DNA of 64,000 nt from Gracilinanus agilis (lineage: Eukaryota), in the NCBI RefSeq assembly GCF_016433145.1, contig NC_058132.1, forward strand, positions 200,895,413-200,959,412, written 5' to 3'. The position numbers and the translations under genes are program-made. This document shows positions 9,702-42,057 of the stretch, in pieces (the stretch's first letter is position 1; each line of letters begins with the position of its first letter). The notes beneath the pieces are model-generated. The model was given only the letters and a program-made list of their open reading frames with translations. It was not told the origin of the DNA and made no database searches.

Positions 9702-9750
9702 CTGAGAGGAGGGCCAGAACCAAGGCCAAGACTGTTGTTATCACTGCCAT
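9702..9750 (-). CDS. APOA5: Apolipoprotein A-V exon 2 coding part (signal peptide MAVITTVLALVLALLS); whole exon 9702-9758
   Basis: Acceptor cctctttctcag|GGTGGATC-ATG; 49 coding nt; donor TCAG|GTGGGT; hydrophobic signal peptide. Confidence 0.93.
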
Positions 9751-10304
9751 GATCCACCCTGAGAAAGAGGAAAAGTAAATGGAGTCAGAAGATTTGGGGG
9801 AAGGGAACTAAAAGTCAATGAATGTCAGAGCTGAGAGAGATCCTCAAGATCACCTAGCCCTAGCCATTCTTCTGCAGAGCTCTCTGTAACCATTCCCAGG
9901 AGGACAGGATGTAGAATTTCCTTCAAATTCTGATTCCAGAGCTAAGGTTCTGAGAGGAGAACATCATGGGCAGATGATGGAAAGGAAGAGGGCTTTTCCC
10001 AAAGATGAAGATGTCCCTATGTCTCACTCACACAGAAAAGATTCACTTTATAAATTATCCTACCACAGGCGAGAGCCCCAAGAAAAGAAATAGGTCTAGA
10101 TGGAAAGTTGGGCTTCTGCTTGTGCCATTTAGTCATCTGTCCTCTCACTTCAGCCTCCCATTTCACAGATGGAAAAGTTGAGGCAAGGGAAGAAAGTACT
10201 CGTGGCCCAGTTTCCTAGTTCTTGCCCACCCCCATTTCTTTACCATAACCTCCTCCCTTGATCTTTCTCTCCTAAGAGGCTAGGACACTATCCTTCCCTC
10301 TCAC

Positions 10305-26883: not shown

Positions 26884-27066
26884 TATACACACACACACTG
26901 TAATGTGCTCCAATATGCCATAAAAATCACTTTGAAAATCTTCAATTAAAGCACTACTTAAATTCCAGGTGTTGTTTTTCTACAAAGAATTTTAAGAGAA
27001 AGAAAAGAATTCAATAAAACTGATCAATACACTTAGATTTTGCTTTTTGGGGTTTTTTAAATCAGT

Positions 27067-27072
27067 TTTATT
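27067..27072 (-). terminator. APOA4: APOA4 poly(A) signal AATAAA
   Basis: tttatt on + strand, about 170 nt after the stop, followed on the - strand by a U/GU-containing region. Confidence 0.8.
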
Positions 27073-27240
27073 TATCAAGGACCATGAATACTACTTTTTC
27101 CCACAGCAACAATCCCATGCCTCCACCTAGAGATGTTTTGGCTTACTGGAGGATGGACAAAGAATTGTGGTTTGGGGTCCAAACCAGGAGGCAAAAGTGC
27201 TCTACAGAGAGCTGAGAAAGGCTGCTCAGACTTTGAAGAC

Positions 27241-28180
27241 CTAGGGCTGGGGATCAGCAGGCATCTCCTCCTGGCTCTCCTGGAGGCTACTGAAGAAGGA
27301 GTTTACTTTGTCCCTCAGGCCCTTCTCCAAAAGGCCCAGGTGGTCCTCTATCTCACCAGACTGGGACCCTAGTTTCTTCTTGAGGTCTTCTAGCTGCTGC
27401 ACCAAGGCCCTGTTGAAGGCCTCTCCTTGGGGCCCGATATTCCTGTGGAACTCTTCAATGTGCTGGTTCATCTGTCCCCTCACCTTGGCCAGGGACTGGT
27501 ACAGCTCCTCTGAATTTCCTGGAATCTTTCCCTGGATGTCCTTAGCAAAAGGTGTCAGTTTTTGCCTCAGGTCTTCTGTGTTCTCAGAGATCTTGGTCCT
27601 CAACTGTTCTACATTCTTCTTCATCTGGAAAGCCAGGCTTTCAAGCTGACGGTTGAGTTGATCCTGGGCACCAGTGGCAAAAGGTGTGAGGGTCTTGCGA
27701 AGCTCTTCTATGTGCTCGTCAATCTTGCCTTGGAGCCCATCAGCGTAAGGGATGAGCTTGTCTTTTATACTGTCCACTTGCTGGTTGACCTTGTCCTTGA
27801 ACTGGTTGGCCAAGGGGACTATGTCAGTCTGCAAGCTCTTTATGTTCTCCTTCATGGCTGCATCCAGCTGCTGAACAAAGGGGGCCAGCTGCTGTTGGAG
27901 TTGCTCCACATTCTCACTGAGGTGGGTTTGGATCTTACCCGTGTAGGGCACCACGTACTGCTTCAGGTTCTGAACATTGTCACTCATCTTCTGGTTGACC
28001 TGTTCTGCAAAGGGCTGCATCTGGACTCGCAGCTCCTCCAGATCCCTCTGGATCTGCATCTTCAGTCTTTCTGAGTCCTGGACCAGACGGGTGGGTAATT
28101 CCATGGCAAAAGGCAGTATCTTCTTCGTCAGGTCATTGGTGTGTGTGCTAACTTCCCCCAACTTGTCCTGCAAAAGGGTG
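27241..28180 (-). CDS. APOA4: Apolipoprotein A-IV last coding exon
   Basis: TLLQDKLGEV...22-mer Pro-punctuated repeats...LRDKVNSFFS. Acceptor ctttcccctgggtag| at 28181; TAG at 27241-43. Joined CDS 49+127+940=1116 nt (371 aa). Confidence 0.97.
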
Positions 28181-28679
28181 CTACCCAGGGGAAAGAGAAA
28201 AAGAAGGTGGTTGCTATTACAGTCTAGACTCTATTACCGAAACATCCTTCACTAAAGTATACTGACCCCTTATCATGGTCTGGGGTGACCCCTTGGTTCT
28301 CCCAAGCAGAGCACAAACTCTGGCAAGTCCTACAAGACTAGAAATGTTTCAAGGATGGGGCTGGTGATACGTATGTGTATGAAGGCTAGAGGGGCTGGTG
28401 AAGGGGGACTTAGAAGCCTACAGTGTATTAGCGGCCCAGGCAACATGGTTGTTGCTTTCTTAGAGCTTTATCCCCAGAGATCCAGCTCTAAATATTTGCT
28501 CAGGAGACCCTTAACATCCCTTAAACTTAAAACTCAGATAGGAATCTGCTCAAAACAAAAAGATCCAGACTCGTCAAGGAACGACTCCCATTATGATATG
28601 TCTTCTGGGATGGCTTCCTGTAAGAAGGCCCCCAGCCTCTACCTATCACCCCTCCCTCCCCATTAGGGTCTCCTCTCAC

Positions 28680-28806
28680 TTGAACTGCTGGTTCAACTCG
28701 GAATTCTGTAGCTGTTCCATGGCGTCCTTGGCATTGGCGCTCAGCTTGTTGAAATAATCCCATACTATTTGGGATATCTGGTCAGGTTGCATCTCAGCCT
28801 GGACAC
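28680..28806 (-). CDS. APOA4: Apolipoprotein A-IV middle coding exon (127 bp)
   Basis: Acceptor cttcctccttcag|, donor AA|GTGAGA. Encodes VQAEMQPDQISQIVWDYFNKLSANAKDAMEQLQNSELNQQF. Confidence 0.96.
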
Positions 28807-29140
28807 CTGAAGGAGGAAGAAGAAGGGCAGAAGTTAGGCATCAAGGTTCAGAAAGAGGCTGCCCACCGTTGCACCAGTTACATGGTCCTAGCTAAATTTA
28901 ATGGAGCCCAACCTAACCAACTGTTTTTCCAGGCAGGGCTTTGTCCCTTCTGATGTAGGGAGCGGGGGGAGGGAATTAGAGGGAAGAGTTTATCCTGGAC
29001 AAGGAAGAAATAGAGCCCTATTTCCCTAGTTTTAACATGAATTGAATAATTAATAGCATGTAAATTGCATATATATCAAATATAAATGATCCTACTATTG
29101 AGACTACAGCCCATGTTAGCATAGCACTAGAACAGAAATA

Positions 29141-29640
29141 CAGTTATCCCTTCCACATGGTGACTTTCCCCATCACAGTTTCAATATATGGTGGGTCACC
29201 ATAAAAAATTAGATAGGAATTTGGGAGGAGTTTTGCAGAAGCCACAGACAATACATGAGATCAGCAGAGGATCCAGGAAAAACATTGAAAAATTAGAAAG
29301 GCTTAAAAAAGTATAGTATTATATCATGTCAGCATATTTTATCTTTTAATACCATCAATATGCACAATTTCTTTTTAAAGTTAAACTAAGAAATAAGTTA
29401 AAGCTTGCAAAAAGAATGTGAAAACCAGCAGACGACATACAAAAGCTAAAAATGTTAACATTGTCCTACATACAGCCTATGATCAAATACTTAACCCCAA
29501 ATTTGCTATAAGGTACTGTAAACACTCCCTTAAAGAAAAAGAAAAACTTTTTCTGGCATGGCCAGAATTTTGAACTCAGATTTTCCAGATTTGGGGGTAT
29601 TGTGATAACCTTAAACCTCACAATGTGGAAGGGGTAATCG
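29141..29640. mobile_element. 500-bp Tc1/mariner-pogo (Tigger-like) MITE in an APOA4 intron
   Basis: 20-bp TIRs cagttatcccttccacatgg / caatgtggaaggggtaatcg (16/20 complementary), flanked by TA and TG (decayed TA TSD). Confidence 0.75.
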
Positions 29641-29813
29641 TGCTTATACCTGTTTCTCAACCCTTCCAACATTCCTGGCAACCACAGGGACCCCATTCCA
29701 ATCAAGTAGGGGTAAAGGATTCCCAACCCTCCCTTGTCATCTTAGAAACCTTCCCTTTCCATTCCACACTCAACCCAGAACTCATGGCCCCATCTGAGGT
29801 TGCATTCACTTAC

Positions 29814-29862
29814 TGGCGATAGCCACAAAGGCCAGAGAGAGTATCATAGCTTTGAGAAACAT
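29814..29862 (-). CDS. APOA4: Apolipoprotein A-IV first coding exon (signal peptide MFLKAMILSLAFVAIA); whole exon probably 29814-29909
   Basis: ATG in AAGATG context; 49 coding nt; donor A|GTAAGT; strong acceptor cctttatctctctcctcacag| at 29910. Confidence 0.95.
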
Positions 29863-30117
29863 CTTGGCTTCTGCTCTGAGCTGGGCCTGAGCCCCACCGT
29901 ACCGGGATCCTGTGAGGAGAGAGATAAAGGATGAGCACGTTCCACCTTGGTCCCTTCCTGTCTTCTAAGGACTCCAGCTCCTACATCCTCCATTCATGCC
30001 AGGCTCCCTGGTTCCTGAGTCTCTCCCTCAACTCCAGTGGAATATTCCAGCAGCCAAAGTTCAAGGGGGTAGAGGAGAGTGAGGACCCCCTAGCAGAGGC
30101 ACAGATGAAGGGCTTAC

Positions 30118-30138
30118 CTGTCCTGCCTCCCAATCTGT
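30118..30138 (-). other. APOA4: Predicted APOA4 non-coding exon 1 (TSS approximate)
   Basis: TATAAA at 30162-30167 and a consensus donor CAG|GTAAG at 30118/30117. Confidence 0.75.
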
Positions 30139-30161
30139 CCCAGGAGTGAGCTAGCTAGCTC

Positions 30162-30264
30162 TTTATACCTGACTCCAGGATCCCCTCCCCTCCCCTGCCC
30201 TCCCTGGGAGCTCCACGCTGGAAGGTGACACATTCCTGGGAAACTGCTTGGACTTTGGTGACCC
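30162..30264 (-). promoter_or_regulatory. APOA4: APOA4 promoter: TATA box and proximal HNF4-type hormone response element (GGGTCACCAAAGTCCAA, 30248-30264)
   Basis: Contains the HNF4-specific CAAAGTCCA motif about 110-125 nt upstream of the predicted TSS. Confidence 0.75.
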
Positions 30265-30884
30265 CACAACGTGGAAGCTGCCAATCCCGTGGCTTGGAGG
30301 GAAGTCTGGATAAGCTCTTATCCTCCCAAAGGTCCAAGAAGGAAGAATAGAAGGAACAAGGTGGGCGGAGAGTTAGACTCAGAGCCTCAGGAAGCCCCTA
30401 AATTCTGTGGAGAGAGATCATTAGAGCCCCACCTCTAGGTAGCCTTGGGGCCCAGCCACAAGTATCAAGGACAGAGTCCATTCCCTCAGCCCCGAGTGTA
30501 CAAAAAGAAGACCCCCAAAGACCTCCGCCCTCTGGTCTCTGACCCTCAGCCTATCTCCTCAACTTTTAGAATTGGGTAGGGACCATAAACAACCTCCTAT
30601 CAGCCCTCAGGATTAGCAGTCAGAAAGACTGGCTCCTGGCCCCAGGTAGAGTTTGACTTGAAGGACTGGGGAAAAGGAGAGAGACACGAAGGCCTTTTCA
30701 TTAAAATGGGCACAGAAGGAGACACCAGGAAGTAAGGCGGGACGAGATGGGGATCATTAAAGAGTTCATTTTGTCTAGGACAGAGCTGGTCATATACCCT
30801 GCTAGGCTGCCCCTCTTTGGAAAGGGAAATATCAGCTTTGTCTTCCCCTACCCTGCCATGTTGCCTCTCCTCCACCCTTTTTCT

Positions 30885-41311: not shown

Positions 41312-42002
41312 GTGAAGCTCCCAGGGATGGAGGGGGGTGGGCAGAGGAAATGAGGAAAATTTTACCCACTTTGGGAGGGCAGGGCCTAGACGTATAAACT
41401 TTGAGCTCTGAGTGCCTTTTGGGGTTATGGGGTAAGGAGAGAGGGGAATGCTTATAGGGAGAGCACAGCATGGAACCCTAAATTTCCCTGTTACCTCTGC
41501 TGGACAGTATCCCTAATCCTTAATATGTCAGAGCAAATATATGTTCTTCTTTTTAAAACAAACCCTTACCTTCTGTCATAGAATCACTACCATACACTGG
41601 TTCCAAGACAGAAGAGCGGTAAGGACTAAGCAATGGGGCTTAAATGACTTGCCCAGGATCACACAGCTAGGCAGTGTCTGAGGCCAGATTTGAACCCATA
41701 ACCTCCTGTATCTAGGCCTGACTTTCCATCCACTGATTCACCTAGCTGCCCCACAAGTATATATTCTTTGTAGCAAACTATCATTATCCCATCCACTTTG
41801 GGAATTGGCATATCAGGAGTCAGGGTGCCTAGGTCCTGGCGTCTTCTGTACTTTTTGGCTTTGGATCCTCCATCAGTCTTTCCAGAGAACATGGCTTGCC
41901 TGGGTTAGAACGGGGAACTTTTAATGCAGGGAGGTGAAAAGACCACACAGAATTTGGAGTCTCCACTCACCTCAGTCATTTTTTCTTAGACACAGAGTGA
42001 CC

Positions 42003-42057
42003 ATGCAGCCCCGAGTTTTCCTTGTTGCTGTGTTCCTGACCCTACTGGTCTATGCTA
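42003..42057 (+). CDS. APOC3: Apolipoprotein C-III exon 2 coding part (MQPRVFLVAVFLTLLVYA); whole exon 41990-42057
   Basis: Acceptor ttttcttag|; 55 coding nt; donor A|GTAAGA; MQPRV start is diagnostic. Confidence 0.95.

What the first reader, a model, noticed from the sequence alone, without database searches (positions are those of the whole stretch)
29910..30167. Marsupial APOA4 appears to retain the ancestral 5'-UTR intron (four exons, not three)
Seen in the sequence: TATAAA (30162-67), a ~20-nt exon ending in consensus CAG|GTAAG (30118), a 208-bp intron with a branch-like CTCAT and an 18-nt pyrimidine tract plus CAG (29910), then 47 nt of UTR before the ATG. Established: human and rodent APOA4 are the exception among exchangeable apolipoprotein genes in lacking the 5'-UTR intron. 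From memory, the human 5' UTR contains CAG|GTGAG…TGATTGTAG|GGAGGATCC, which would be the shrunken relic of this intron, and the opossum exon 2 starts GATCC. If so, the loss is eutherian-specific and occurred by collapse and retention rather than precise deletion.
Basis: partly seen in the sequence, partly recalled or inferred. Interest (0 to 1): 0.75.

Follow-up and report, generated by a model that had tools for sequence, protein, structure and literature searches.

The report
Opossum APOA4 keeps 5'-UTR intron
In this opossum genome the fat-transport gene APOA4 very probably still has the small non-coding first exon and 5'-leader intron that its sister genes have and that human and rodent APOA4 lack. 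This dates the loss to after marsupials and placentals split, but it is a modest point of gene structure.

Summary
- TATAAA at 30167-30162
- CAG|GTAAG, with the last exon base at 30118
- a 208-bp intron, 30117-29910
- CTCAT branch-like site and an 18-nt pyrimidine tract
- exon 2 starting GATCC at 29909
- 47 nt of UTR before the ATG at 29862

The signals exceed chance. The donor ranks 7th of 5,935 GT sites in the window and the acceptor 23rd of 9,893 AG sites.

RNA contigs from a related species (two studies) confirm both coding introns. They stop following the genome exactly at the predicted acceptor. One contig carries 7 further 5' letters that do not lie there, and no RNA covers the intron. 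The exon 1-exon 2 junction itself was not seen, because exon 1 is too short to be laid.

Synteny (APOA5-APOA4-APOC3-APOA1) and the same 5' layout in all three paralogues support retention of the family's ancestral intron.

I put about 0.78 on the four-exon model. The second claim, that the human 5' UTR holds a collapsed relic of this intron, could not be tested. Human sequence was off limits and no eutherian APOA4 DNA was reachable.

The finding is real but modest. It contradicts a published scheme that places the loss at the origin of APOA4.

The parts
30209..30414 (-). Proximal promoter block. It includes an HNF4-type core, CAAAGTCCA, at 30257-30249.
   Evidence: A DNA contig of relative B (X17 record 14) differs at only 6 of 206 bases here, against about 5-10% in the exons and introns of the gene. 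The motif was read, and its assignment to HNF4 is from my own knowledge.
30162..30167 (-). TATAAA box
   Evidence: It is the only TATAAA on this strand with a strong donor 50 nt downstream.
30118..30137 (-). Putative non-coding exon 1, about 20 nt. The start is inferred as 30 nt after the TATA box. The end is fixed by CAG|GTAAGC.
   Evidence: It contains no ATG. The transcription start was not measured.
29910..30117 (-). Intron 1 in the 5' UTR, 208 bp, GT...AG. CTCAT branch-like site at 29935-29931 and pyrimidine tract at 29931-29914.
   Evidence: Runs X1 and X8 (organism A), identified as RNA by their spliced contigs, show no depth over 29948-30215, while exon 2 has depth 248 and 41. The intron holds three ATGs.
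29814..29909 (-). Exon 2: 47 nt of UTR (29909-29863), then the ATG at 29862 and 16 1/3 codons of signal peptide (MFLKAMILSLAFVAIA).
   Evidence: RNA contigs X1 record 7 and X8 record 24 cover 29813-29913. The 4 extra bases, ACAG, are identical in the end of exon 1 and the end of the intron.
28807..29813 (-). Intron 2 (phase 1), holding a high-copy repeat at about 29140-29546.
   Evidence: A spliced joint is seen in X1 and X8. Depth rises to about 23,000 over the repeat, against about 26 for single-copy sequence, in DNA run X24.
28680..28806 (-). Exon 3
   Evidence: Joints 28804>29813 and 28180>28680 in RNA contigs.
28181..28679 (-). Intron 3
   Evidence: Joint that skips 499 bases, ends CT..AC on the + strand, in X1 and X8.
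27050..28180 (-). Exon 4: amphipathic repeats, stop codon at 27243-27241, AATAAA at 27072-27067.
   Evidence: Pfam PF01442, E = 2.8e-61. RNA contigs run to 27053. Sequence read.

Best explanation
The window holds the APOA5-APOA4-APOC3-APOA1 cluster of a didelphid opossum. Its APOA4 gene has the family's ancestral four-exon layout.
- Transcription starts about 30 nt after the TATAAA box, near 30137. This is inferred.
- A non-coding exon 1 of about 20 nt ends at 30118.
- A 208-bp GT-AG intron (30117-29910) is removed.
- Exon 2 (29909-29814) supplies 47 nt of leader, the ATG and most of the signal peptide.

Splicing gives a 67-nt leader with no upstream ATG. The intron holds three ATGs, one of which opens a 49-codon frame that overlaps the real start, so removing it keeps translation of this abundant secreted protein efficient.

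Shown here: the sequence signals, both coding introns, and that RNA of a close relative leaves the genome exactly at the predicted acceptor.

Inferred: that the sequence joined there is the TATA-proximal exon, the exact transcription start, and that the species of the window splices like its relative.

The evolutionary reading follows by parsimony from the paralogues. The 5'-UTR intron was still present in the common ancestor of marsupials and placentals, and was lost later on the lineage to human and rodents.
For: RNA evidence:
- Runs X1 and X8 (organism A, about 8% diverged, two studies) are RNA. Their contigs carry joints 28180>28680 and 28804>29813.
- X8 record 24 (1,382 nt) maps its letters 8-108 to 29913-29813. 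Its first 7 letters do not lie on the adjacent genome.
- X1 record 7 begins exactly at 29913.
- Bases 29913-29910 (ACAG) equal the last 4 bases of exon 1. This is therefore exactly where a spliced transcript must stop matching.
- RNA depth is 0 over 29948-30215, against 248 and 41 on exon 2.
- The promoter block 30209-30414 differs from relative B at only 6 of 206 bases.

Sequence signals:
- The donor ranks 7 of 5,935 and the acceptor 23 of 9,893.
- CAGGTAAG occurs 4 times in the window, two of them at the exon-1 donors of APOA4 and APOA1.
- This is the best donor in the 11 kb upstream of the ATG and the only one paired with a TATAAA box.
- There are three ATGs in the intron and none in the spliced leader.

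Paralogues in the same window. All three have an acceptor just before the ATG:
- APOA5, 8 nt before.
- APOC3, 13 nt before, with TATAAA followed by GTAAGG.
- APOA1, 22 nt before, with ATAAATA followed by CAG|GTAAGG.

Gene identity and synteny: PF01442 on three minus-strand genes and Apo-CIII on the plus strand between them.

The three-exon human gene is documented in PMC6523623 and PMC6854765.
Against: - No contig or read across 30118|29909 was displayed. The 7 unmatched letters of the X8 contig were not printed, so their identity with exon 1 is unverified.
- Exon 1 is too short to be laid on its own.
- The RNA comes from a relative, not from the species of the window. No RNA run of that species was found.
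- X1 has low-depth unspliced contigs for introns 2 and 3 but none for intron 1.
- The contigs of relative B do not align across 30143-30208, which includes the TATA box, so conservation of the TATA box is not shown.
- The splice matrix uses frequencies from memory.
Confidence: 0.78

Rival explanations
1. The gene has three exons, as in eutherians. Transcription starts without a TATA box inside or just after the pyrimidine tract, at about 29913-29920. On this reading the TATA box, donor and acceptor are non-functional relics or coincidence.
For: - Both RNA contigs end at or within 7 nt of 29913, as they would at a transcript 5' end.
- No junction was seen.
- No RNA was laid on exon 1.
Against: - There is no TATA box or good initiator 25-35 nt upstream of 29913-29920.
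- The X8 contig's 7 extra letters fail to follow the genome, although the pyrimidine tract lies right there. At about 10% divergence, my estimate of the chance of three or more mismatches in 7 letters is about 2-3%.
- X1, the deeper run, stops at exactly the base where spliced and unspliced forms would diverge.
- The conserved promoter block sits 300-500 nt upstream of 29913 but 40-250 nt upstream of the TATA box.
- The joint chance of signals this good is about 1e-4.
Confidence: 0.12
2. The acceptor at 29910 is used, but the exon joined to it is a different, more distant 5' exon from an alternative promoter, not the TATA-proximal exon at 30137-30118.
For: The 7 letters upstream of the break in the X8 contig were not shown, so their origin is open.
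Against: - The donor at 30117 is the strongest on this strand in the 11 kb up to APOC3, and the only one 50 nt after a TATAAA box.
- The best-conserved block lies directly upstream of that TATA box.
- APOA1 and APOC3 use the same layout of a TATA box followed by a short exon.
Confidence: 0.07
3. Transcription starts at the TATA box, but the 208 bp are not removed, so the gene has a long unspliced leader and is functionally three-exon.
For: None from the data, apart from the precedent of the eutherian gene having no intron in its leader.
Against: - RNA depth is zero over 29948-30215 in both RNA runs, while exon 2 is at 248 and 41.
- Three upstream ATGs would be retained.
Confidence: 0.02

Closest known systems
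Four-exon architecture of the exchangeable apolipoprotein genes (APOA1, APOC3, APOA5, APOE, APOA2 and others)
   Same: - A short non-coding exon 1 after a TATA box, ending in CAG|GTAAG.
- A 5'-UTR intron of about 200-560 bp (208 in APOA4, about 300 in APOA1, about 560 in APOC3) that ends a few tens of nt before the ATG.
- A phase-1 intron in the signal peptide.
- A third intron before the long repeat exon.
APOA1, APOC3 and APOA5 in this very window show the same layout.
   Different: Nothing structural. The UTR part of exon 2 is somewhat longer (47 nt, against 8-22 nt in the paralogues here).
Human and rodent APOA4 (three exons, two introns)
   Same: - Orthologous position between APOA5 and APOC3, on the opposite strand to APOC3.
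- The two coding introns are at the same places.
- MFLKA... signal peptide.
- PF01442 repeats (PMC6523623).
   Different: The eutherian gene is described without an intron in the 5' leader (PMC6523623, PMC6854765). Here the leader appears to be split by a 208-bp intron.
Published evolutionary scheme of the family (PMC6854765)
   Same: It treats the first intron as ancestral to the family and lost in APOA4.
   Different: It places the loss at the origin of the APOA4 lineage in early vertebrates. It also derives the four-exon APOA5 from APOA4, which already fits that scheme poorly. A marsupial APOA4 that keeps the intron would move the loss to after the marsupial-placental split.

Membership tests
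APOA4 orthologue (APOA1/C3/A4/A5 cluster) | Position and orientation: between APOA5 and APOC3, same strand as APOA5 and APOA1, opposite to APOC3. | tested here: met
   PF01442 ORFs on the minus strand at 6.7-7.7 kb, 27.2-28.2 kb and 47.7-48.2 kb. Apo-CIII (PF05778, E = 7.9e-11) on the plus strand at 42.9 kb.
APOA4 orthologue (APOA1/C3/A4/A5 cluster) | Long last exon of 22-mer amphipathic repeats (Apolipoprotein A1/A4/E domain) and an MFLKA-type signal peptide. | tested here: met
   PF01442, 207 bits, two stretches. Signal peptide read. The resemblance to human APOA4 is from my own knowledge. No mammalian APOA4 was available in the protein database.
Four-exon exchangeable-apolipoprotein gene architecture | Intron inside the 5' UTR, ending shortly before the ATG, with GT-AG ends. 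| tested here: met
   The signals are present and rank near the top of the window. RNA of a relative departs from the genome at the acceptor, and nothing covers the intron. The junction itself was not displayed, so this rests on indirect RNA evidence.
Four-exon exchangeable-apolipoprotein gene architecture | Short non-coding exon 1 directly downstream of a TATA-type promoter. | tested here: inconclusive
   TATAAA lies 50 nt before the donor, with a conserved block upstream. The transcription start was not measured, and exon 1 is too short to be laid by the reads tool.
Four-exon exchangeable-apolipoprotein gene architecture | Phase-1 intron in the signal peptide, and a further intron before the repeat exon. 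| tested here: met
   Spliced joints 29814|28806 and 28680|28180 in RNA contigs from two studies.
   Human sequence was not to be fetched or compared. No eutherian APOA4 protein or locus was reachable. The 1986 gene paper is not held.

The most novel reading that the evidence does not exclude
The leader of eutherian APOA4 may be the marsupial exon 1 + intron + exon 2 with the intron shrunk below a size that can be spliced and therefore permanently retained. That would be intron loss by collapse and exonisation, rather than by the usual precise excision through a reverse-transcribed copy. It would date to the placental stem lineage, after the split from marsupials.
Probability: 0.3. Interest if true: 0.6.

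Novelty: new member of a known kind. Interest (0 to 1): 0.35.

Why it matters
APOA4 is the textbook exception in its gene family because it lacks the 5'-UTR intron. One published scheme puts that loss at the birth of the gene. A marsupial APOA4 that keeps the intron does three things:
- It dates the loss to the placental lineage.
- It removes the inconsistency that the four-exon APOA5 is derived from a supposedly three-exon APOA4.
- It gives a concrete "before" state against which the eutherian leader can be aligned, to ask how an intron is lost.

It is a point of gene-structure evolution and annotation. It is not a new mechanism, and automated RNA-based gene models of opossums may already show the extra exon.

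Tried and rejected
- RNA of the same species: none was found. The only strong holder (X24, 0.90 of words) is DNA of the same species.
- Fetching APOA4 of other marsupials, eutherians, monotremes or birds through the protein tools failed. The word search returned only two frog proteins.
- One frog chromosome file was too large to read. The other frog locus (L001) gives a range that covers only the coding sequence. It has an acceptor-like site 13 nt before the ATG (score 8.7), which is suggestive only. Its orthology is uncertain and there is no RNA.
- The large representative-protein search was not run.
- Literature: no paper in the held library describes the exon structure of marsupial, bird or fish APOA4. 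The 1986 PNAS gene paper is not held.
- Homology of exon 1 between APOA4 and APOA1: a shared GGACAGAT at the presumed start. Once the common donor consensus is removed, p is only about 0.04-0.05, so I treat it as chance level.
- Unspliced read-through was rejected on zero RNA depth.
- The N runs (about 26.4-26.8 kb, 42.1 kb and 55.4-56.1 kb) were left as they are.

Full report
**What is in the sequence.** On the minus strand the region reads as follows.
- TATAAA at 30167-30162.
- Then 20 nt that include an (AGCT)3 run.
- GGGACAGATTGGGAGGCAGGACAG|GTAAGCCC, with the last exon base at 30118.
- A 208-bp interval (30117-29910) that ends gtgCTCATcctttatctctctcctcacAG.
- GATCC... from 29909, 47 nt to the ATG at 29862, then MFLKAMILSLAFVAIA and a CCA|GTAAGT donor after 29814.

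**Is it more than chance?** I scored all GT and AG sites with a simple donor/acceptor matrix (frequencies from memory, background from the window).
- The donor scores 11.4 bits and ranks 7th of 5,935 GT sites on both strands.
- The acceptor scores 12.6 bits and ranks 23rd of 9,893 AG sites.
- Both score higher than the RNA-confirmed donors of exons 2 and 3, and the acceptor scores higher than that of intron 3.
- CAGGTAAG occurs 4 times in 64 kb. Two of these are the exon-1 donors of APOA4 and APOA1.
- Between the APOA4 ATG and APOC3, 11 kb away, this is the best minus-strand donor and the only one with TATAAA 50 nt upstream.
- The joint chance of such a donor within 40 nt of a TATA box and such an acceptor within 250 nt before the ATG is about 1e-4 (my arithmetic on the frequencies).

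**Gene identity and context.**
- The last exon (28180-27244) matches Pfam Apolipoprotein A1/A4/E at E = 2.8e-61.
- Two more PF01442 genes lie on the same strand, at 6.7-7.7 kb and 47.7-48.2 kb.
- An Apo-CIII match lies on the opposite strand at 42.9 kb.
- This is the APOA5-APOA4-APOC3-APOA1 order and orientation described for human (PMC6523623).
- Earlier notes of this scan call the genome the agile gracile opossum. I did not verify that.

**RNA evidence (one call allowed).** No RNA run of the same species was found.
- X24 is DNA of the same species: 4 differences in 2,170 bases.
- X17 is DNA of a relative, organism B.
- X1 and X8 (organism A, two studies, about 8% diverged) are RNA.
  - Their contigs carry joints 28180>28680 and 28804>29813.
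  - These confirm exons 29909-29814, 28806-28680 and 28180-about 27050.
- At the 5' end, X8 record 24 (1,382 nt) aligns its letters 8-108 to 29913-29813. Seven more 5' letters do not lie on the adjacent genome.
- X1 record 7 (101 nt, depth 263) begins exactly at 29913.
- Bases 29913-29910 are ACAG. These are the last four bases of the intron and also of exon 1 (...GGACAG|GT). A transcript spliced 30118|29909 must therefore stop matching the genome at exactly 29913.
- Depth in both RNA runs is zero over 29948-30215, against 248 and 41 on exon 2. This excludes an unspliced leader in that species.
- The deeper run breaks at the very base where spliced and unspliced paths would diverge in a k-mer graph. 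The shallower run continues for 7 letters. This fits a branch point better than a transcript end, but that is my inference.

**Promoter placement.**
- Relative B differs at only 6 of 206 bases in 30209-30414.
- It differs at about 5-8% in coding exons and about 10% in the putative intron (25 of 237, 29906-30142).
- The best-conserved block of the locus therefore sits immediately upstream of the TATA box, not upstream of 29913.
- It contains CAAAGTCCA (30257-30249), the core of the HNF4 motif (from my own knowledge).
- Caveat: B's contigs do not align across 30143-30208, so conservation of the TATA box itself is not shown.

**Functional sense.**
- The intron holds three ATGs. One opens a 49-codon frame that overlaps the true start.
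- The spliced 67-nt leader has no ATG.

**Family comparison within the window.**

| Gene | 5' layout |
|---|---|
| APOA1 | ATAAATA (50529), about 30-nt exon ending TTCAG\|GTAAGG (50468), about 300-bp intron, acceptor 22 nt before the ATG |
| APOC3 | TATAAA (41393-98), GTAAGG donor at 41432, acceptor 13 nt before the ATG |
| APOA5 | strong acceptor 8 nt before its ATG at 9750 |

APOA4 here has the same plan.
- The paralogues share this intron position, so retention is more parsimonious than regain in marsupials.
- A frog APOA4-like gene also has an acceptor-like site 13 nt before its ATG. Without RNA or firm orthology this adds little.

**Comparison with the literature.**
- Human APOA4 has three exons (PMC6523623).
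- PMC6854765 lists APOA4 and APOC4 as the three-exon members, so APOA4 is not the sole exception.
- The same paper places the loss of the first intron at the origin of the APOA4 lineage, while deriving the four-exon APOA5 from it.
- The present evidence argues that the loss came later, after marsupials and placentals diverged.
- I found no paper in the held library on the exon structure of marsupial APOA4.

**What could not be tested.**
- The proposed relic in the human 5' UTR, and hence "collapse and retention" and strict eutherian specificity, remain untested. The letters are from memory, human DNA was not to be used, and no eutherian APOA4 was reachable.
- My own recollection of the human leader is not independent evidence, and I did not use it.
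- By the operators' rule I did not search with a joined (spliced) protein or with the joined exon 1-exon 2 sequence.

**Verdict.**
- The four-exon reading is probable (about 0.78) but lacks a displayed junction.
- The mechanism-of-loss claim is open.
- Interest is modest. The finding refines the timing of a known intron loss and would become more interesting only if the eutherian relic is real.

Noticed in passing
window 29140-29546 (APOA4 intron 2): High-copy interspersed repeat. Summed contig depth reaches about 23,000, against about 26 for flanking single-copy DNA, in the same-species DNA run. It is also high in relative B. Many variant joints occur within it.
   Followed up: no
window 30209-30414: The block upstream of the APOA4 TATA box is the best-conserved part of the locus against relative B (6 of 206 differences). 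That is better than the coding exons. It contains CAAAGTCCA (30257-30249), an HNF4-type core.
   Followed up: partly
window 30140-30133 and 50495-50488 (minus strand): APOA4 and APOA1 share GGACAGAT at their presumed transcription starts. Without the common donor consensus, p is about 0.04-0.05, so this may be chance.
   Followed up: yes
window 41393-41433 and 41988-42003 (plus strand): In APOC3, the TATAAA box lies only 39 nt before a GTAAGG donor, which implies a first exon of about 10 nt. The acceptor before its ATG is weak (5.8 bits). The real start site or donor may differ.
   Followed up: no
window 9702-9760 (minus strand): APOA5 exon 2 has its ATG at 9750 (MAVITTVLALVLALLS), a very strong acceptor 8 nt upstream, and a CAG|GTGGGT donor after 9702.
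   Followed up: partly
window 30143-30208: The (AGCT)3 run and the GGGGA repeats around the TATA box are where the contigs of relative B stop aligning and where the reads tool reports cut reads. This is probably length variation.
   Followed up: no
L001 4975-5050: A frog (Rhinoderma darwinii) APOA4-like gene has ...cactccacAG|G 13 nt before the ATG and a phase-1 GTTAGT donor after 16 1/3 codons. This is the same exon-2 plan as the mammalian family.
   Followed up: partly
window 28805 (exon 3, second base): RNA of the relative has G where the window has T. The codon that spans intron 2 therefore reads AGG (Arg) instead of AGT (Ser), near the signal-peptide cleavage region.
   Followed up: no
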